From Octopus sinensis (lineage: Eukaryota), in assembly GCF_006345805.1 (NCBI RefSeq), contig NC_043008.1, positions 55,862,001 to 55,926,000 of the forward strand: 64,000 bases of DNA, in the 5' to 3' direction. The position numbers were made by a program, and so were the translations under genes. Positions 9,401 through 63,934 of the stretch are shown here, one piece after another (position 1 is the stretch's first letter; each line of letters starts with the position of its first letter). The notes below the pieces were generated by a model. The model saw nothing but the letters and a program-made list of their open reading frames with translations. It was not told the origin of the DNA and did no database searches.

Positions 9401-11413
9401 ATAAAATATTAGGGAATAAATCCAAACTTACAGGGAAAAATCAGATTTAGGATTGAATCCAATTTTATAGTCAAATATTATATTATATTAAATTAGAAAT
9501 AAAACCACTATTAGGCAAATCATACAATGAAAAACTTAAGCCAATACATAAGATTAATTAATTTATATTATTTTAAATATATATCAAAATTATTAAAAAA
9601 AGATAATTAGTATAATTATAATTATAATTATAATGGTGTTATACTAATTATCTTTTATTTAATAATTTTGATATATATTTAAAATAATATAAATTAATTA
9701 ATCTTATGTATTGGCTTAAGTTTTTCATTGTATGATTTGCCTAATAGTGGTTTTATCTCTAATTTAATATAATATATATTTATATATATAGATAGATACA
9801 CACACACACACACACACTCACATATATATACGATGGTGTTCTTTCAGTTTTCATCTACCAGATCCACTCATAAGGTTTTGGTTGGCCTGAGGTTATGGTA
9901 GAAGACACTTGCCCAAGGTGCCACACAGTGGGATTGAACCTGGAACCATGTGGTTGGGAAACAAGCTTCTTACCACACAAATATACATGCACACATACAC
10001 ATGTGCATATGTACACATATATACGCTGAGAACTGTAAAAGTTTATTGTGGTGAAGATGTTGGAAGGGCGTTAAATAATGGAAGTGGTAGCGGTGGTTGT
10101 AATAAGTTTAGTAAGACAGCAAACTATTTATATTTGTGAAATGAAATTTATAATAATTAAAAATCTCGTATGATTTAATACATGTGCTTTAGTGCAAGTA
10201 ATTGTCACCAAGCACCACCACCACACCACCACCACCACCACCACCACCACCACCACCACCACCACCACCGCCACCACCACTGACACTGCCGCCACCACCG
10301 AACAGCAAACAAAAGTCGTGACAAATAACAAATAACCATGTTGTCAACTACTGCCAACACGATTGCTACCACTGCTCACCATTATCATCTTGTTTACTTT
10401 CTCTTCTTTCTTTTTCTCTAGCCTTTTTTTCTTTCCCCCCTTCTCTCTCATGTTTTCTCTCTCTGTCTCTCTGATGTGCATGCTAATCTTGTCTCTCTTC
10501 CTCTCTCTCTCTCTCTCTCTCTCTCTCCGTTCCTCTCTTTCTCTCTCTATGTCTTTATCTGAAGAGCTGTGACTTTAAGTGGTTAGGGTGTTGGACTCAT
10601 GGTCATAAGATTGTGGTTTTGATCCCTGGACCAAGTGACGTGTTGTGTTCTTGAGCAGAACACCTCATTTCACATTACTCCAGTCCACTCAGCTGGCAAA
10701 AGTGAGTAACTTTGTGACACACCGGTGTCACACCCAGGTGAGGAATTTATAAGCCACTTTTTCTTTGTACCTCTCCCTTCAACCTTTTTACTTTCCCTTT
10801 CAAATGTGACACACACCACAGGTACGACCATATGTACAAAGACAAAAAGTTAGCGTATTGATATTACTGATGGAAACCGGGAAACCGGCCCTTTAGAGTC
10901 AGCATTATTCAAGAAGGTAACTTTACTTTTTACATTCACCTCTTTATGTCTTTCTCCATTTACTGTTACCAACAGCAATGTCACTGCTGTTGTCTCTTTC
11001 ATCAGCACTAACACAATTACCGACTGCTTTTTTCATTATTCTGTTTAAGTTTCTTTCCTTACCATGACACAGAAGGTAGGTAGGTATAAATATACTATTG
11101 AGTTAATCATCATCATATGTCTGTTTTCCAAAACTGGTAAGCTGATGCCCTTCCTAACGCTAACCACTCCAAGAGTGTAGTGGGTGCCTCTTGTGAATTA
11201 TTTTCTTAAGACACAAGGTTACATTGTGAGAAGGAAGTGTTGATTATATCAACTCCTGTTTTTGGTTGGTACTTCATTTTATCAACCCAGGAAAGATGAA
11301 AGCTAAAAATGGCAGCTGTCAAGATTTAAACTTGACTGTAAAGATCTGTCTTAGTCTACTGTTTAACTGATTTTGCCCTATCCTTAAATAATAATAGTAA
11401 TAATATAATAATA

Positions 11414-19579: not shown

Positions 19580-19848
19580 TTTTGTTGTTTGTTCCTTCTC
19601 GAGTCATGCCTGGCTCATAAGGGCCGGTTTCTTTGGCATATAGGTTCCCCACTTGGATGGGACGCCAATCTGTCGCAGGTGAGCTGCAAGATGCAGGAGG
19701 AAAGAGTGAGAGAAAGTTGTGGCGAAAGAGTCAGCAGAAGTTCGCCATTACCTTCTGCTGGATCCACACATCGCCCGGTCTGAGATTAGAACCTGTGATC
19801 CCTCGACCGCGAGTCCGCTGTTCTAACCACTAGGCCATGTGCCTCCAC
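19580..19848 (-). mobile_element. SINE family 2 copy nested in a family 3 element, with TSD
   Basis: cagtaca is duplicated at 19573-19579 and 19851-19857, and the host repeat resumes after the insertion. Confidence 0.8.
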
Positions 19849-22242
19849 GTCAGTACACTTTGCAAAATGGTTGGTATTAAGGAAGGGCATCCAGCCATAG
19901 AAACCATACCAAAGCAGACAGTTGGAGCCTGATGTAGCCCTCTGGCTTGCCAGCTCCTGTCAAACCGTCCAACCCATGCCAGCATGGAAAGCAGATGTTA
20001 AATGATGATGATGATATGTACTTGTGTGTAACATGTATGTGTGCATCTTTGCGCTTGTCCTCTTACCACTTGACAACCAGTGTTGGTTTGCTTACATCCA
20101 TATAACCTAGTGGTTTGGTAAAAAGAAAATCGTAGAATAGCTATCTGACAATATTTCAGCATATCACTGCCTGGAATCGAACTCAGAATCTTGGGGTTAG
20201 TAGCCTGCGCTCTTAACCACTACGCCACATGCCCATTGGCATACCCATCAAATGTAAATAATGTACATTTCAGCATATGATTTGAAGAACATTTGTATGC
20301 TATTTTTAGCAGGATAGGTGGTTGTAGCTGGGCTGAATTATGAGTTGTTGTAAGGATTAAAATTTGTCATCAACATATCTGCTGTTTTTGTTTTATAGGT
20401 TGTTGCTGTGTTTTAGCCCTAGGTTGGCCCTATTTAAACAACCTATGATCAAAAGTATGGGACCCATGGTCCAATCCTTCTCCATCTCTTTTAGGGTTAT
20501 GTCAAAGACTACATTATCTAATATGCTCTTTTCTTTATTGAAAACAGAACGGTAGATATTAGATGGAGCTCTGGCTGCTTTTTCTAGCAGATCAAAAGAC
20601 CATTTAGATGATTCCTTACTGACCTTTAGATTGTTATTGTCTTGTTCTGTCTTTGGTCAGCCATGATCAAGTAGATCTCTGATGACAGCGATTCCAGCTG
20701 TGACCATCCCATCTTATTTTCAGGCATGTTATGTCTTGGATTACATTATCCACTATTTTAATTTTTTTATCTCTTACTTTTATAGTCACTTAATTATGAC
20801 TTTTGAGTGATTTGGCTGTTATTTCCAGCAGATCTTGCAACCACGTAAAGGCTCCCATTGTCTCCTTGTAGAATTCGTATTTTCAGATGGCAGGATGACA
20901 CAGAAAAACCATTCATTACTGTGTAAGTTTCTAATTAAAGCTGCTTCTGGAATGTAAGTCTTGATTAATTCTGTAAATGTTGATTAATTCTCAAGAAATA
21001 ATTATTTATAGCTGAGACATAATGTGCATTTTCAAAGTCAATTCTCTGAAGTATAACAATAGTTTAATCACTGCTAAATATAACCATTTCTAATTAAGCC
21101 AACGATGGAGCAGACCCATAGTCAGTTGATCAGCTAGATATGTAAACCAAATTGCCCTCAATTGTGAACTACCACCTTAAAATAGGCACAATACTTCATT
21201 TTCATGCATCTTGGTGACATTTTTCAGGCTAAAATTAACAGCCAAAAAGGATAAGTCCACTTATACACCAAGAATGATTTTGTTATGGTTATAAACAAGC
21301 ATCACTATCATACAAGTAGTGATGTGGAAGCACATGGCCTAGTGGTTAGAGCAGTGGACTCGCGGTCGAAGGATTGTGGGTTCATATCTCAGACCGGGCG
21401 ATGTGTGTGTGTGTTTATGAGCAAAACATCTAAGCTCCACGCGGCTCCGGCAGAAGATAATGGCAAACTTCTGCTGACTCTTTCGCCACAACTTTCTCTC
21501 ACTCTTTCCTCCTGCATCTTGCAGCTCACCTGTGACGGACTGGTGTCCTGTCCAGGTGGGGAACCTATACACCAATGAAACCAGGTAAGTGGCCCTTATG
21601 AGCCAGGCATGGCTCAAGAAGGAACAAGCAGTGATGTTCATTTACAGTAGTAGCCCTCAACCAGTTTTTGTCTATAGACTGACCCCTTTAATTCCTATCT
21701 TACTCAGGTGAGCCCTTATAACCATTAAGTGTTTCACCCCTTGAAATTGGTTGATGTAAATTTCAAGCGCTGTGTACTTGCTTTCAAAAAAGAGGAACGT
21801 GTCAAGACAATGTGCTGTGTGCATAATACAGTTTCAGGAAGGGGACCATATATTAATGCACAGACTGCCACGTCCCATTATGTATTACATCCTGTTTTTA
21901 GATTTACCATACCAAAATTTATTTTTGATGTTTGATGTTTTGTTAAGCCAATATACGTCATCTTGGAGGCCTGTGGCCTGGTGGTTTGGATGTTGGACTC
22001 ATGGTCATAAGATTGTGGTTTCAATTCCTGGACTGGGCGACACGTGTTCTTGAGCAAAACACATCATTTCATGTTGCTTCAGTTCACTCAGCTGGCAAAA
22101 ATGATTAATTCTGTGATGGACCGGTGCCCCATCCAGGTGGGGAATTTATATGCCATGATAACTGGGAAACTGGCCCTTATGAGTTGGTATGATTTCAGGA
22201 GAAAACTTTACCTTTTTAATATACATCATTTCTCTGACTTAC

Positions 22243-22361
22243 ATATGCCTTTAAGGGATCTCATTCTCCCAGTAATGAATGGTTTTCCTGTGTCATCTTG
22301 CCATCTGATGGCTTCAGCTGAGATGGTTATCATTGGTTTGGCCTTGTTGCCTGATAAACAG
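22243..22361 (-). CDS. Candidate 119-nt internal exon ((H)CLSGNKAKPMITISAEAIRWQDDTGKPFITGRMRSLKGI)
   Basis: Acceptor gatttttttacccccccccatgacaacag| and donor CATAT|gtaagt. Only one minus frame is open (phase 2 in, phase 1 out), compatible with the neighbouring candidates. Unique high-complexity sequence. Confidence 0.45.
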
Positions 22362-22608
22362 CTGTTGTCATGGGGGGGGGTAAAAAAATCCTATTGTCTT
22401 TTTATAATTAAATATTATTAGGATTTGTATGAAAAAGATTGTGATAATATTTTGTGTATTTGTGCAAGTGTGGCTGTGTGGTAAGAAGCTTGGTTCCAGT
22501 TTCAGTCCCACTGTGTGGCACCTTGGGCAAGTGTCTTCTACTATAGCCTCAGGCTGACCAAAGCCTTGTCAGTAGATTTGGTTGACAGAAACTGACAGAA
22601 GCCCATTG

Positions 22609-24540: not shown

Positions 24541-26041
24541 CGAGAGCGAAAGAGAGAGGTTGTATCAGCTCTTGGCTAATACTCCTTTACAGCTGAGTGA
24601 ACTAGAGCAGCATCAAATAAAGTGCCTTACTTAAGGACATGATGCACTGCCTATTGCAGGAACTGAACCCATAATACTGCAATTATGTGTTGGTTAATGC
24701 CTGAAAAGACTCATGATTGTGGACACAAGTGTTCAAAATAAGGTTCTCCCGAAGGTAATAAGAAAATGGTAAAGTTATCTTCTTGAGTAGATTTTGATGT
24801 TGGACGAAATGCTTTATGTATTTCACCTGTCACTATGTTCTGAGTTCAAATTCCGCTGAGGTCGACTTTGCCTTTCATCCTTTCAGGGTCGATAAATTAA
24901 GTACCAGTTGCTCCCTCCCCCCAAATTTCAGGCTTTGTGCCTACAATGGAAAGGATTATTGTTATTTTTGTTTGGTTCCATTTTGGTCATGATTGAGCTG
25001 ACATACATTGAAAGGTATTCCAGCTGTGATTATCATACATTTAGAAATGTTTTGAATTTCAGAACCTAATGCAGTGCTTCCCAGTTAAGCTTCTGCAAGA
25101 AGTTGCTAGGAGTTCTGCAAGATTTAGTGCTAAATGGACTAATTATATGCAGATGTATTTGTCAGTAATTTTCATGTTTAATTCTATATTTGTAATTTTA
25201 TATTGCGTATATTATATACACATGACATATTTGAAATCCTAGCACCTGTGGGTTGCAAGGAAGCATGGAAAGAGAAATGACTTTTTAACAGGAAATTACA
25301 GGAGGGTTTGGTCTAAACAAGTCTTTCCTTAACTTTTTTTACTACCTAAGCCTTTTATTTCCTATGGATTATAGGCCATCAATGATTTTTCTTTACAGTT
25401 CTTGATTTTAGATTGTGTTCCTGTCTCAGGTGTTGTTAGTTTTAAATTATCATTGATGCTTCTTAACTTTGCTTTTTTTCTAGGTAAGACTATTGACCCT
25501 ATGCAAACCCATTTTAAAACAAGGAAGAGGGGGTTTCCATATTAGTCTGGCCTCAGTTCTTTGACCTATCCAGCCTGGGAGGCCCCATCAAGAGCTTATA
25601 CTCTGTTGACACAACTCTTGAGGTCACTGAAGCATACAAGCCACTATTCTACAAGGACTGAACTCTGTGGTGAAAACAAGGCTTTGGTTAAGATGAAATT
25701 TATTAAACCATCTTTGTGGTGTCTGATGGATTTAGCACTGTCTTACCTTTTGAAGACAGTTTTTAAGATTTGTGTAAGCTCTTACAAAACTCAAATTTAT
25801 GAAGAGAAAGCAAAAGATCCTTTAGCATTCACATTATTCTGTCAAAAATAATGCTTATTTATTCACATTGTTTTGAATTTACATGTATTACCTTGTAGCT
25901 ACGAGATTTTGATGAGGCAACTGTTAATTTTTCAGAATGACATTGTAGGGTAGGTGTGAGAAACCAGATCTAGCCAGTTTGAACATAAAACAAGTGGAAT
26001 ATTTTGGTTGGATATGGCTGGTTTAAATACTGAAGGGTTAA

Positions 26042-26405
26042 TCTCTCTATATATAAACGGCAAAATGTCTGCGTGTGTGTCCTTTATACAAATCCACAAT
26101 TTTTCAGTTAGAGGGCTCGCATTTTCTATGGTCATTCAAAACCGTCCAAGGATGGTTGTGCACATCTTTACATTTCCCCAGTCACTCCGCAAAGCCATTA
26201 AAAACTCAATAGAAGCGACTTTTTTGTGAATTTTCTATCCAAAGCCCAATCAAAATGCCCGAAACTTGATACGCCAATTGAATGCCAGCTAGCTGTATGT
26301 GATTGGTCGGAGATTTGGACAGTACCCGCGTGTATGTGCGCACGCACGCAGCTGTATATGCATGCACTAGCACTATGACCCGGCGTTGCCGAGTCATAGT
26401 GCTAG
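26042..26405 (+). mobile_element. Non-autonomous Helitron
   Basis: A|TC(tctctatatataaacggc) 5' end, subterminal GC hairpin cggc-gtt-gccg, CTAG|T 3' end, no TSD. Confidence 0.7.
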
Positions 26406-40479: not shown

Positions 40480-41034
40480 TTTCTGTCCCTTTTTTTGTCC
40501 TTGTGCTAATTGTAAACAAAACATCATGTGCTAATTGTAAAAAAAAAAAAAATCATCATGTGCTAATTGTAAAGAAAACATCATGCAAGTGTTGTTGCTT
40601 GTTTGCTGTCTTCTGTGAAAATATGTGGACTGGGGGGGGGGACATGTTTTCATGTAACATTAACTTGTTTGGAAACAGATGAAGGTTGGTGACAAGGAGA
40701 GCGTCCAGCCATTGAAAATCTGCTTTGCTTCAACAAATCCCTTCTAACCCATGCAAGCAAGGAAAAATGAATGGTAAAACTATGATGATGATATTTAGAA
40801 GACTGAAACCAATGCTACTAATAGTTTCCTTTTTTTTAAGAATCACACAGCTCATCAAGATCCCTATGTTGGAAATATTGCTTTTAATAAGGGCGATCTG
40901 ATTAACTGTGTGGCTGTCACATAAGGAAATTTATTCAACAGTTTTCCAGCCACTGCTGGTTTTAGCCAATCAAATTCAGTTTGTAGTTTAGTTTATGTCT
41001 TGAAGTACCTTCTTGTTTATTATTACTCTAGACA

Positions 41035-46398: not shown

Positions 46399-47049
46399 TA
46401 TATCATCATCATTATCATCATCATCGTCGTCATCCTTTTCACCCCACCCTGCTTTTATGGGTAGGACACACACATACACATGTACACCCACATACCCAAG
46501 TTGTCGAACACATTTCAAAGCCTATAGAGTTTCCTTCCAATTCAATTAACTCTCTTATTACATTGAAGAAATTATTTATAGCTACAGCGCCATCTAGAGA
46601 CCTTTTTTTTCCACTTTTTGTTTTTGTTTTTCCTTCTGAAGTTTCCAAACTCTCACCCTCTTTTTTTTTTTTTTCCTTTTTTTATTTTTCTTTCCCGTTG
46701 GGGGGTGGTGCTCCATTTGAACTTCAGTTTTTAGTCTTCATACCAATTTCATGTTTTACATTTATGATGATTCTTTAAAAAATATATATTTTTTGCTGCC
46801 CCCTGGACTAACCAGTCCTGTAGACGGAAACTGAACACTCATCATGTGTGTGTGTGGTGTGTGTGTTGTATCAGGTCATTAAGAGTGAAACGTCTGATTT
46901 TCTTATGCACCAAGTTTGACAGTCTTTAACCCTCATGTTTTAGCCTGGCAATTCTTTGTTTTACAATATTGACGAGTTACATCATCACTTTTCGAAATGC
47001 AATTCATGGTGTCTGATTATATTGTGAGTTTTCTCTTGTAAACCAATTC

Positions 47050-47525
47050 TTGTGAACCCATGGCTAGATCAAAAATTTGTGTTGTTTATGAATATGAGTT
47101 CTCTCATGGAACCAATGCATCCCAGACAGCTTGAAATATCAACGAGGTGTTTGGTGAAGATGTGGCGAATGAGCACACTGTATGTCGATGGTTTGAGAAG
47201 TCACCGGTCTGGTGATTTTACATTTGAAAATCAGTCCTGTTGTAGATCTGAGGGCAAGGTGGATAATCATGAGCTGGAAACTGTAATGGAAGCAGATACA
47301 TCTCAAACTACACGTGAGTTAACAGCAAGGTTTGACGTTTCGACTCCAACTATATTGGACCATCTGAAACAAATCAGCAAGTTAAGGAAGCTGGAGAAAT
47401 GGATACTACACAAAGTGAACAAGCATAAATTACACATCTTGAAACTTGCTGTTCTTTGCTGTTATGGCATAAAAGCGAACCATTTTTGCATCGTATTATT
47501 ACATGTGGTGAAAAATGGATTCTTT
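47050..47525 (+). mobile_element. Decayed mariner (Tc1/mariner) transposase fragment
   Basis: The translation RSGDFTFENQSCCRSEGKVDNHELETVMEADTSQTTRELTARFDVSTPTILDHLKQISKLRKLEKW matches the mariner HTH region and a decayed WVPHEL motif. A frameshifted tail resembles FLHRIVTCDEKW. Confidence 0.85.
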
Positions 47526-48661
47526 TCTTTGCCATGTTAAAAGCATCCAGTCCATACTGTAATGTGGTTGGTGTTTGGAAGGGCATCCAGCTGTAAAAAT
47601 CATACCAAAACTAACCTCACCTGTGCTAGTGCCATATAAAAATAAATGGGATCACTCTGCTGGGTGGTTGGTCTTAGGAAGGGCATCCAGCAGTAAATTC
47701 CTTGCCAAAACAGACACAGTAGCCTAGGGTACTGGCTGGCTCCTGTCAAACCATCTTACCCATGCATGCATGGAAGATGGACATTAAACAATGATGATGA
47801 TGATGATGATGATGATATATATATATATATTACAGAGAGAGAGAGAGAGAGGAAAGGGAAGGCAGTTGGCTGTGCGGGTAAGAAGTTTGCTTTCAGCTAT
47901 GTAGTTTTGGTTTCAGTCCCACTGTATGGCACCCTGTGCAACTGTCTTTTGATATAGCTTCAGGCTGACCAAAGCCTTGTAAATGGATTCAGTCGACAGA
48001 AAGAAGCCCACAATTTATATACTACATCCATCTATCCATCCTCACGCACACACACACACACACATGCATATACATGTACATGCATACATACATAATTGTT
48101 TTATGTTTCTAGTGAAAAAGAAAAAAACTAGAATAGAACAATTTGATGCCAAGTACTCAATGCTATGCATGTAGAGTGAAGTGTATTTATTAGAAAAAGA
48201 GCACAAATAATGGCTCTGACAAAGTTTGTTTCCTTTTAGACAGAATTTGCTCATAATCTGTAGAGAAGGAAATTAGATTATTTTTATAAGAGCTGTTGTT
48301 TATTAAATACATACACACACAGATATTTCTATAGTTTTCAGCTCAGTGTACTTGACAGCAGGAAATGTATACTTTAATTTTATATTAAATTATAGTCATA
48401 CTCAGAACTCTTGGAACACCCATTGTGTGTGCATTAATATGTGTTGTCTATTGAATGTTTTAATACATGTTCTTAAATGTATAATAATGACATCCACTGT
48501 ACCAAGGACTCAATATAAATTGTAGAGCCAAGCAAACATAATAAAGTAAGGCTGATTGACAGCTACTTCGAAGTTTCATAGGAGGTGGCTAACCAAAGTG
48601 TCATTTTGATAGCCATTTCCAATGAAATCACTGAGTGTCAACCTTCTATATATATACATAC

Positions 48662-51997: not shown

Positions 51998-52097
51998 NNN
52001 NNNNNNNNNNNNNNNNNNNNNNNNNNNNNNNNNNNNNNNNNNNNNNNNNNNNNNNNNNNNNNNNNNNNNNNNNNNNNNNNNNNNNNNNNNNNNNNNN
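51998..52097. other. Assembly gap (100 N)
   Basis: Run of N between microsatellite tracts. Confidence 1.
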
Positions 52098-59847: not shown

Positions 59848-60989
59848 CCTGCTTTGTTGGCAAGCTGGCAGCAGAATCACTGGAGCATCACAAAAACGCC
59901 CTTGTTGCATTTGTTCTGGTTCTTTACGTCCTGAGTTCAAATCCTGCTGACGTCCAGTTTTGCCTTCCTTCCATCCCTCTAGCACTGGGGTTTATATAAT
60001 TCACCGGCTCCCACCCCACCACACACCTCCCCTCATAATATCTGACCTTGTGCTGAAATTAAATTATTGGTCTTTATTAAAAGAAAGTACCGGTCAAGTC
60101 CTAGATTCAATGTACTTGACTATCCTCTACTCCTAACTTTGCTGGCCTTGTGCCAAAACTTGAAAAAAATCATTATCACGATCACGGTCATCATCATCAT
60201 CATCTTCATCAAGGCAGTGAGCTGGCAGAATTTTTACAATGTTGAATAAAATGTTTAGTGGTGTTTCTTCTGGCTTGAGTTCAAATTCCACCAAGTTCAA
60301 CTTTGGTCTTTCATCCTTTCCAGTTTGATAAGCTAAGTACCAATGAAGTACTGGAGGAGTGGGGTTGGCTAGTATAATCTACTAGACCTCCTCGCTCGAA
60401 ATTTCAGGCCTTGTTCTTTGGAGAACAACAGTTGGGCGAGGGGCTGTGGATTTGGTGGTCAGTATAATCCTGAATCTGCGGGATTCCTTAACTGGACCCT
60501 ACTTAGAGGTTCTCCTCTATCAAGGGGACTGCATTATTGACACGTTTACATATTTTTTTATACCATGTATACTTTTATCTCGTTTCACTGCCTCTTCCCT
60601 TTCTTTTCCCCTCATCTTTTATGTAATTGTAGACTCTCCTTGCAGTGTCCCCTCTGATCTATGTCCCTCTGGCAAAGTAAAAGTAACTACTACCACCATC
60701 AAAACCACCACCATCACCTCCACTGTTACCACCATTGCTGCTGCCGCCGCCGCCACCATCACCACCGCCACTGTCACCGTCTCCACTACCACCACCACCA
60801 CCATCATTATTATTAACATGATTATTTTGGCTATTTTCCAACCCAACACGATAGTCAAAGTTATGATATGGTTAATTTATTGATCACACTAGTTGTTTAT
60901 TGCCAATGTCACAATTCTCTTATTGATAGATTTCATGGAACAAGTAATATTATGAGATGTTTAAAATCACACACACACACACACACACA

Positions 60990-62915: not shown

Positions 62916-63934
62916 GTCTGTGTTAACTAAATCCCAAAGATGGAGCCTTGTATCTTAGTTGGAAACCGGTTCCCTCCTCGGTGGAAGATTTATAATAATT
63001 AAAAAAATAGAAGAGATATACATACACACACACACACAGATATGTGTGAGTGTGTTTCCTTGCCTTGATATCAGGCAGTAGTTGTAAACAAGTATCACCA
63101 TCATACAAGCAGTGTCCCTCATTTCCAATCTTCTGTGGAAACATGTTTGACCAGAGAAGATATTTATACTTTGCTTGGAAACAATATTAAGAATGGAGGT
63201 GACAAGTTCTCCTCCTGTCCCTCAAAATTTCAGGCCTTGTGCCTATAGTAGAAAAAAGAAAATTTTGGGGTCAGGAACTATCTTGGATAACTTCCAGAAA
63301 TTTCTGGCCTGGCACTGCTACTGAGAAGCACTGCTGGTTTGAGATAAACTGTACAGGCACAGAAGCGCTCCTACTCACATGTAGGAAGAATCCAGCTACT
63401 GGCCAAATCGATTGTGAAAATTGCTCCATCACCCATATTTTATGAAGCTGGGCACACACTGTGCCTCTGCCTAGTGGTTATGGCAGAAGAGGTTGTGTGG
63501 TGGACGAGGCTGAAAGGATTGAAGAAAGACACCTCGTTAGTCAAGTCCCCATCAATTTGTTCTACTAGGAAGGGAAAATGAAGTTGGTGAAGGAAGTGGT
63601 ACCTCCCATTGAATTTGTGAAGTAATGGATGACTGTGGCAAAAATGGTTTGAGTGAATCGCCCTACTTTAAGTCTACACTTGTAAATAGAACAACAGCTG
63701 GGCAAAGGCTTGTGTCTTTGGTGGTCTAGTTAATCCTGGATCTCTAGGGTTCCTTAATTGGTCCTAGTTGGACGGCCTCCTGTATCATACTTTGTATGCC
63801 ATTTATACTTTTATCTCATTTCACTGCCTTTTCCCTTTCTTTCTTTGATAAAATAAGTACCTTGAAATCACCAAAATTTGAAACCATTATTACCTTAAAA
63901 TCTCTGTGCCAAAATTTGAAATTACTACTACTAC

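What the first reader, a model, noticed from the sequence alone, without database searches (positions are those of the whole stretch)
20883..22308. Long-range 39-bp near-perfect inverted repeat pairing a candidate exon with an intronic element 1.35 kb away
Seen: plus 20883-20921 (tcagatggcaggatgacacagaaaaaccattcattactg) matches the reverse complement of 22270-22308 at 37/39 positions, giving one A.C mismatch and one G.U pair. Two further blocks extend the match: ttaaag (20935-20940 vs 22249-22254) and atgtaagtc (20952-20960 vs 22236-22244), the latter covering the donor. I saw neither arm elsewhere in the window, and two SINEs lie in the loop. Inference: a distal editing-complementary sequence. 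On the minus strand the mismatch is A22298 (CAA to CAG, silent), with neighbouring adenosines able to recode. On the plus strand the mismatched A would give GAA to GGA in RWQDDTEKPFIT.
Basis: partly seen in the sequence, partly recalled or inferred. Interest (0 to 1): 0.72.

Follow-up and report, generated by a model that had tools for sequence, protein, structure and literature searches.

The report
Inverted 39-bp repeat hugging splice-like sites
A real, one-of-a-kind 39-base inverted repeat in octopus-like, transposon-rich DNA would fold a transcript into a strong RNA duplex, and its edges sit on splice-site-like signals on the plus strand, so it may be a genuine exon/intron pairing that RNA-editing enzymes could act on, but no exon, transcript or editing could be shown here.

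Summary
20883-20921 and 22270-22308 are reverse complements at 37/39 positions, with sharp edges. No other copy exists in the 64 kb. Two SINEs with target-site duplications lie in the 1348-nt loop.

In a 2.2-kb RNA of either strand the arms pair with probability about 1. In a 3.8-kb context a 140-bp inverted SINE pair that crosses the repeat wins the nested minimum-energy fold.

Its peptide matches no protein, Pfam family or solved structure.

The plus strand looks more meaningful. Three of the four repeat boundaries coincide with TTTTCAG|, |GTAAGT and CTCATTCTCCCAG|, which chance gives at about 1e-6. The left arm is then a 36-nt, purine-rich, exon-like unit. Non-repeat DNA also has a 5-7% T>A skew on the plus strand.

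My best reading, at about 0.4, is a plus-strand exon paired with a downstream complement. That duplex would be an ADAR substrate and would mask splice sites.

The rivals are a neutral inverted micro-duplication and a low-copy transposon relic. Transcription, editing, genome copy number and cross-species conservation could not be tested.

The parts
20883..20921 (.). Left arm of the inverted repeat (TCAGATGGCAGGATGACACAGAAAAACCATTCATTACTG). On the plus strand it is A-rich (15 A, 8 T).
22270..22308 (.). Right arm, 37/39 complementary to the left arm. On the plus strand it is T-rich (15 T, 8 A).
20887..20922 (+). A 36-nt exon-like unit that the left arm covers almost exactly. Two frames are open: WQDDTEKPFIT and GRMTQKNHSLL. 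The second frame is also open upstream to 20811.
   Evidence: exon status is inferred, not shown
20880..20886 (+). Acceptor-like TTTTCAG at the outer edge of the left arm.
20923..20928 (+). Donor-like GTAAGT two bases after the left arm. A second GTAAGT lies at 20954-20959.
22260..22272 (+). Acceptor-like CTCATTCTCC-CAG (9 of 10 pyrimidines, then CAG). The CAG is the first three bases of the right arm.
22273..22379 (+). Possible second plus-strand exon-like unit. It is open in the frame that continues GRMTQKNHSLL and is followed by GTAAAA. Very tentative.
   Evidence: Pfam and PDB found nothing
22243..22361 (-). It has no homologue.
20904..20904 (+). The A opposite C22287 on plus-strand RNA, in the triplet GAA. 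Editing would give E>G or K>E, depending on frame.
22298..22298 (-). The A opposite C20893 on minus-strand RNA, in the triplet AAG.
20952..20960 (.). A 9-nt block (ATGTAAGTC) complementary to 22236-22244. A 6-nt block (TTAAAG) at 20935-20940 matches 22249-22254.
21326..21624 (+). SINE1 in the loop, with a 13-bp target-site duplication at 21313-21325 and 21625-21637. It also pairs with an inverted copy at 19626-19765.
21965..22218 (+). SINE2 in the loop, with an 11-14-bp target-site duplication at 21951-21964 and 22219-22232.
21790..21925 (+). Decayed piggyBac-type C-terminal cysteine-rich motif in the loop, with a frameshift and two in-frame stops.
   Evidence: recognised from memory only, because the pieces are too short for the tools

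Best explanation
The repeat is a single-copy inverted micro-duplication. Its left arm is a 36-nt exon-like unit on the plus strand (TTTTCAG|20887-20922|GTAAGT).

In a plus-strand pre-mRNA this unit would zip onto its complement 1.35 kb downstream (22270-22308). That complement begins at a CTCATTCTCCCAG acceptor-like site. The resulting 39-bp helix encloses a transposon-filled stretch and covers the unit's acceptor AG, abuts its donor and covers the next acceptor-like AG.

Such a helix is an ADAR substrate. One A.C mismatch sits at A20904, and 14 other paired adenosines lie in the exon-like arm. The helix would also hide splice sites, so editing and inclusion of the small exon would be coupled.

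Shown here: the repeat, its uniqueness in the window, its folding energy, and the coincidence of its edges with splice-like signals. Inferred: transcription on the plus strand, exon status, editing, and any regulatory role.
For: - The repeat is real and unique in the window.
- The core duplex is -63 kcal/mol, and pair probability is about 1.0 in a 2.2-kb RNA.
- On the plus strand three of the four repeat edges carry YYYYCAG or GTRAGT. A random non-repeat 39-mer has P=0.009 for an acceptor-like site and P=0.003 for a donor-like site at an edge. None of 61,078 random placements has both. The product for three signals is about 2e-7 to 6e-7.
- The minus strand has none of these signals at the repeat edges.
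- On the plus strand the left arm is A- and purine-rich, and the right arm is T-rich.
- Non-repeat DNA shows a T>A excess of 5-7% on the plus strand in seven of eight 8-kb bins. In other eukaryotes this marks the sense strand of introns (established knowledge, not tested for octopus).
- One frame stays open from 20811 through the unit and, if spliced at the marked sites, on through 22379.
- The literature treats a reverse-complement match of at least 20 nt and at least 80% identity within 2 kb as an intramolecular dsRNA source of editing (PMC9989829). It also notes that introns have been largely ignored in cephalopod editing-structure work (PMC8891338).
Against: - No protein, Pfam or PDB match exists for any frame of either arm or its neighbours. 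A 12-residue exon is also too short to search.
- No recognisable coding exon was found anywhere in the window among 257 non-repeat ORF pieces, so the host gene is unknown.
- In a 3.8-kb context the nested minimum-energy fold forms the 140-bp SINE pair 19626-19765/21443-21582 (127-129 of 140 pairs) and none of the 39 repeat pairs, because the two helices cross. On a plus-strand transcript the SINE pair is also completed first.
- The A at the A.C mismatch has a 5' G, which is the least favoured ADAR neighbour (established knowledge).
- A near-perfect helix predicts unselective editing.
- Two transitions in 39 bp are what a young neutral duplication would show.
- The statistics on splice-like edges were computed after I had seen the pattern.
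Confidence: 0.4

Rival explanations
1. It is a neutral local inverted micro-duplication in non-coding DNA, for example templated repair synthesis or a replication template switch. It has no selected role. If transcribed, it would be just one more, and minor, dsRNA among the many inverted SINE pairs nearby.
For: - The arms are 95% identical with abrupt edges and unrelated flanks.
- Both differences are transitions, as expected under neutrality.
- The arm divergence (2/39) is no higher than that of the SINE target-site duplications in the loop (1/13 and 1-3/14).
- The window holds other short local duplications, such as 40502-40528/40559-40585 and 60555-60606/63791-63842.
- No coding evidence was found anywhere.
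- The window holds 816 inverted pairs of at least 30 nt within 5 kb, many of them far longer.
Against: - It does not explain why three repeat edges coincide with splice-like signals on one strand, which chance gives at about 1e-6 and still at most 1e-4 after a generous penalty for looking afterwards.
- It does not explain the 9-nt inner block (P about 0.02-0.035).
Confidence: 0.3
2. A minus-strand coding exon (22243-22361) pairs with an editing-complementary sequence 1.35 kb downstream in its intron (20921-20883). A22298 is the A.C site.
For: - The ORF is open over 54 codons (22229-22390) with a GTAAGT donor at 22243. A T7AC9 tract lies upstream of ACAG|/TCAG|.
- A22298 sits in the favoured AAG context opposite C.
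- On a minus-strand transcript both arms are made before the competing SINE partner at 19626-19765, and the 9-bp donor helix has P about 0.5.
Against: - The peptide is absent from 1.84 billion representative proteins, apart from weak bacterial repeat hits, and from Pfam and the PDB. The padded searches also found nothing.
- An ORF of 54 codons is unremarkable at 37% GC. The window has 257 ORFs of at least 40 codons in non-repeat DNA.
- The pyrimidine tract fails a simple acceptor filter.
- The repeat edges carry no splice-like signal on this strand.
- The T>A skew points to the other strand.
- The A.C site would be silent.
Confidence: 0.1
3. The arms are transposon-derived. They could be terminal inverted repeats of a low-copy DNA transposon or MITE, or facing ends of two decayed copies, with short subterminal motifs (TGTAAGT, TTAAAG).
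For: - The inner arm ends read CAGT..., like Tc1/pogo termini (recalled from memory).
- Short motifs recur next to both arms with unequal spacing.
- The loop is largely transposon DNA: two SINEs, a piggyBac-type remnant, and an old repeat at 21656-21734.
- Weak old repeats lie left of the left arm.
Against: - No target-site duplication of 2, 3, 4 or 8 bp flanks the pair in either arrangement.
- No further copy of either arm exists in 64 kb, even at low stringency.
- The TTAA sites next to the arms are followed by AG, not by the CCC/GGG of piggyBac ends.
- This model does not explain the splice-like edges.
Confidence: 0.12
4. It is an intron-split hairpin. Both arms are plus-strand exons (20887-20922 and 22273-22379) and the loop is their intron. 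Splicing would then create a 32-bp hairpin with a 4-nt loop in the mature RNA.
For: - GTAAGT lies directly after the left arm, and a strong acceptor-like site lies at the start of the right arm.
- One frame is open across the hypothetical junction.
- The joined sequence folds into the hairpin, at -69.5 kcal/mol for the 143-nt product.
Against: - There is no homologue for the second unit.
- Its first 36 nt are T-rich, like intron sequence.
- Its donor (GTAAAA) is weak.
- I know of no natural precedent.
Confidence: 0.05

Closest known systems
Exon/intron editing-site complementary sequences (GRIA2 Q/R and R/G sites; long-range intronic elements of Drosophila synaptotagmin and channel genes). Cited from established knowledge.
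   Same: An exon-like segment is complementary to a sequence in the downstream non-coding stretch. An A.C mismatch lies inside the helix. The kilobase-scale distance is within the known range.
   Different: Known selective sites use imperfect helices with bulges, whereas this helix is near-perfect over 39 bp. Here the complementarity stops at the edges of the exon-like unit. Exon status, editing and conservation are all unshown.
Inverted SINE/Alu pairs that give hyper-edited intronic dsRNA
   Same: Both involve intramolecular pairing of two nearby inverted copies in a transposon-rich region, and both are expected to be edited promiscuously. The operational definition in PMC9989829 would count this pair.
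   Different: The arms are not SINE copies and are single-copy in the window. At 39 bp the helix is much shorter than the neighbouring SINE pairs of 140-210 bp.
Conserved long-range RNA structures that loop out introns or mask splice sites (intron-bridging stems; docking/selector systems). Cited from established knowledge.
   Same: The helix brackets a GTAAGT...YYYCAG stretch and overlaps splice-site-like signals.
   Different: In known cases the complementary boxes are usually intronic. Here one box is the whole exon-like unit. No evidence of an effect on splicing exists.
Short templated inverted insertions from DNA repair or template switching. Cited from established knowledge.
   Same: Both are a short inverted copy of nearby sequence with sharp edges and no target-site duplication.
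   Different: Typical templates lie much closer than 0.8-1.35 kb. This mechanism does not predict splice-like edges.

Membership tests
ADAR editing-site complementary sequence (exon/intron duplex) | Base-pairing between the segment holding the edited A and a sequence on the same transcript | tested here: met
   The arms are 37/39 complementary at -63 kcal/mol, with pair probability about 1 in 2.2 kb. In 3.8 kb, however, a crossing SINE helix displaces it in the nested fold.
ADAR editing-site complementary sequence (exon/intron duplex) | One partner is a real exon of an expressed gene | tested here: inconclusive
   Splice-like signals sit at the plus-strand edges. No homologue was found for any frame. 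No RNA data were available.
ADAR editing-site complementary sequence (exon/intron duplex) | A-to-G differences between RNA and DNA in the paired segment | not testable with these tools
   No transcriptome or reads of this organism are reachable.
ADAR editing-site complementary sequence (exon/intron duplex) | Both partners are conserved, with compensatory change, across species | not testable with these tools
   No cephalopod genomes are in the collections. Scans of metagenome and prokaryote contigs gave 0 hits.
DNA transposon / MITE terminal inverted repeats | Target-site duplication flanking the repeat pair | tested here: not met
   The flanks are ...CGTATTT| and |TGGCTTC. No 2-, 3-, 4- or 8-bp duplication is present.
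DNA transposon / MITE terminal inverted repeats | Multiple copies in the genome | tested here: inconclusive
   There are only two copies in 64 kb. The genome itself could not be searched.
Inverted SINE pair | Both arms are copies of a SINE family | tested here: not met
   The arms have no other match in the window, whereas the SINE families have 6-35 loci.
miRNA / hairpin RNA precursor | A compact hairpin recognised as a known RNA family | tested here: not met
   The loop is 1348 nt, or 767 nt without the SINEs. Rfam gave no match.
Splice-regulating long-range RNA structure | Complementary boxes overlapping or bracketing splice sites | tested here: inconclusive
   This is met at the level of sequence motifs on the plus strand. 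Whether the motifs are used splice sites is unknown.

The most novel reading that the evidence does not exclude
This could be a natural intron-split hairpin in an octopus. Two consecutive plus-strand exons would be reverse complements of each other. Removing the 1.35-kb transposon-filled intron would then create a tight 32-bp hairpin in the mature RNA. That hairpin would be a ready-made substrate for ADAR, or for Dicer, whose formation depends on splicing.
Probability: 0.05. Interest if true: 0.75.

Novelty: new member of a known kind. Interest (0 to 1): 0.42.

Why it matters
Cephalopods recode their neural transcripts by A-to-I editing on an exceptional scale. Structural studies of their editing sites have nonetheless worked almost entirely on spliced transcripts and have ignored introns (PMC8891338).

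A verified case of a small exon pairing with a complement 1.35 kb away would give a concrete, testable example of a long-range editing or splicing element in an octopus. It would also link editing to inclusion of a microexon-sized unit.

If the repeat is instead a neutral duplication, it is ordinary. It would be one short helix among many much longer SINE-derived helices in the same region.

Tried and rejected
1. Pfam, the PDB and a full phmmer scan of 1.84 billion representatives gave only weak hits to bacterial repeat proteins sharing a W.DD.G-like motif. I take these as chance or repeat inflation.

2. Searching the 90%-cluster library with the exon peptide padded with X to pass the length filter. 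Nothing was found. The X runs changed length on entry (513 and 1487 residues), so the scored region may have been offset by up to about 13 residues.

3. Looking for raw genomic ORFs of relatives, using the 125-aa plus ORF across the right arm. Nothing was found, so orthologous loci could not be fetched.

4. Finding the host gene. 257 non-repeat ORF pieces of at least 40 aa were scanned against Pfam.
   - Only marginal hits came back.
   - The TRAP_alpha hit (6e-4) probably belongs to ORF 25935-26135(-). It looks like chance when set against a remembered human sequence.

5. Rfam and tRNA scans found nothing.

6. Exact-pattern scans of metagenome and prokaryote contigs gave 0 hits, as expected.

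7. The transposon-end model. I checked TA, TTA, TTAA and 8-bp duplications and piggyBac-type ends at the two TTAA sites. None fits.

8. A larger inverted paralogous structure. tblastx of the window against itself showed none around the repeat.

9. SINE orientation as a strand indicator. The main family is 16 plus against 19 minus, so it is uninformative.

10. The mismatch pattern as evidence of selection. Rejected, because any two transitions give one A.C plus one G.U half of the time.

Full report

Arms 20883-20921 and 22270-22308 are reverse complements at 37 of 39 positions, 1348 nt apart. The 39-mer, with up to three mismatches, occurs only at these two places. Shuffles give none. A low-stringency blastn of both arms with their flanks finds no weaker relative anywhere in the 64 kb.

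The identity stops abruptly and the flanks do not align. About 43-49% of the window matches itself somewhere else. Even so, this is the only substantial inverted pair whose arms are otherwise single copy.

A 9-mer match in the two 60-nt inner flanks arises by chance with P about 0.02-0.035, so it is suggestive only.

**Context.**

The window is about 37% G+C and full of (TA)n and (CA)n runs and tRNA-derived SINEs. The commonest SINE matches what I remember of the abundant Octopus SINE. I therefore treat the organism as an octopus, on memory rather than on a test.

Both SINEs in the loop are bona fide insertions with target-site duplications:
- SINE1 is 21326-21624.
- SINE2 is 21965-22218.

Without them the arms were 767 nt apart. 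The rest of the loop holds an old repeat (21656-21734). It also holds what looks like the decayed cysteine-rich C-terminus of a piggyBac-type transposase. I recognised that motif from memory, and its pieces are too short to search separately.

**Folding.**

The 39-bp core is worth -63 kcal/mol on either strand. With its flanks the duplex reaches -77 to -80 kcal/mol. In a 2.2-kb RNA of either strand the 39 pairs have probability about 1.0, apart from the single A.C position.

The picture changes in a 3.8-kb context. SINE1 in the loop is 90% complementary over 140 nt to an inverted copy at 19626-19765. That helix crosses the 39-bp helix. The nested minimum-energy fold forms 127-129 of the 140 SINE pairs and none of the 39 repeat pairs.

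So the two helices either coexist as a long-range pseudoknot or compete, with the order of transcription deciding. On a plus-strand transcript the SINE pair is completed first. On a minus-strand transcript the 39-bp pair is completed first.

The frame is open for 54 codons (22229-22390) and ends at a GTAAGT donor. An ORF of that length is unremarkable at this base composition. The window has 257 ORFs of at least 40 codons in non-repeat DNA.

The searches for a homologue of the peptide gave:
- no Pfam or PDB match;
- only five weak hits from a full phmmer scan of 1.84 billion representatives, all to bacterial repeat proteins;
- nothing from two searches of the 90%-cluster library with the peptide padded to pass the length filter. 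Their region coordinates may be slightly off.

Neither edge of either arm carries a splice-like signal on the minus strand. The A.C adenosine (22298, context AAG) would be a good ADAR site, but it is silent in that frame.

**The plus strand.**

Three of the four repeat edges coincide with splice-like signals:
- TTTTCAG ends four bases into the left arm.
- GTAAGT starts two bases after the left arm.
- CTCATTCTCC-CAG supplies the first three bases of the right arm.

For random non-repeat 39-mers in this window, an acceptor-like site lies at the 5' edge with P=0.009 and a donor-like site at the 3' edge with P=0.003. None of 61,078 random placements has both. The product for all three signals is of order 1e-6. 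I saw the pattern before I computed this, but even a hundred-fold penalty leaves it unlikely by chance.

Further points on the plus strand:
- The left arm then delimits a 36-nt unit (20887-20922) that is purine- and A-rich. The right arm is T-rich, like intron sequence.
- Non-repeat DNA from about 8 kb onward has 5-7% more T than A on the plus strand. In other eukaryotes this marks the sense strand of introns. That rests on established knowledge and is untested for octopus.
- One frame is open from 20811 through the unit. If the marked sites were spliced, it would stay open on through 22379.
- None of these peptides has a Pfam or PDB match. Twelve residues cannot be searched meaningfully.

**What it most likely is.**

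I put about 0.4 on a plus-strand exon-like unit paired with a downstream complement. That helix would be deaminated by ADAR and would cover the unit's acceptor, abut its donor and cover the next acceptor-like site.

By established ADAR biochemistry, a near-perfect 39-bp helix is edited at many adenosines rather than at one. The A.C adenosine (20904) has the disfavoured 5' G. Editing it would change E>G or K>E, depending on frame.

The rivals and their weights are:
- A neutral inverted micro-duplication, about 0.3. It fits the sharp edges, the two transitions and the lack of any coding evidence. It does not explain the splice-like edges.
- A transposon relic, about 0.12. It fails the target-site-duplication test and the copy test within the window.
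- An intron-split hairpin, about 0.05. This is the most novel reading that remains possible.

**What could not be done.**

No cephalopod genome or transcriptome is reachable with these tools. Genome-wide copy number, transcription, RNA-DNA differences and cross-species conservation therefore remain untested.

The literature confirms two things. Pairs like this one are routinely counted as intramolecular dsRNA sources of editing (PMC9989829). And intronic partners have been largely ignored in cephalopod editing-structure studies (PMC8891338).

Noticed in passing
window 9479-9776: A near-perfect AT-rich palindrome with 123-nt arms, 98% complementary, and a 52-nt spacer. It is a far stronger hairpin than the finding and may be a foldback or MITE-like element.
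   Followed up: partly
window 19626-19765 and 21443-21582; also 19082-19225/19624-19767 and 55393-55602/55615-55824: Inverted SINE pairs of 140-210 nt at 81-90% complementarity. The first pair has one arm inside the finding's loop. It crosses the 39-bp helix and displaces it in a 3.8-kb nested fold.
   Followed up: yes
window about 21790-21925 (+): A decayed piggyBac-type C-terminal cysteine-rich motif (C..C ... CTDCHVPLCITSCF*IYHTK) with one frameshift and two in-frame stops. I recognised it from memory, and the pieces are too short for the family tools.
   Followed up: partly
window 47028-47537 (+): A 170-codon open frame that looks like the N-terminal, DNA-binding part of a mariner-type transposase. 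Marginal helix-turn-helix Pfam hits (0.002-0.006) among the ORF pieces may belong to it, but the batch scan does not say which piece matched.
   Followed up: partly
window 8001-64000, non-repeat DNA: A sustained T>A excess of 5-7% on the plus strand with no G/C skew. It is absent in the first 8 kb. This suggests a plus-strand transcription unit beginning after about 8 kb.
   Followed up: partly
window 51998-52097: A run of 100 N, which is an assembly gap.
   Followed up: no
window 60555-60606 and 63791-63842; 40502-40528 and 40559-40585: Short local direct duplications (52 nt at 90%; 27 nt at 96%) whose copies are otherwise single in the window. They show that small local duplications are not rare here.
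   Followed up: no
window 20922-20991: The stretch just inside the left arm is locally repetitive. TGTAAGT occurs twice, with a third TGTAAAT, and TTGATTAATTCT occurs twice.
   Followed up: no
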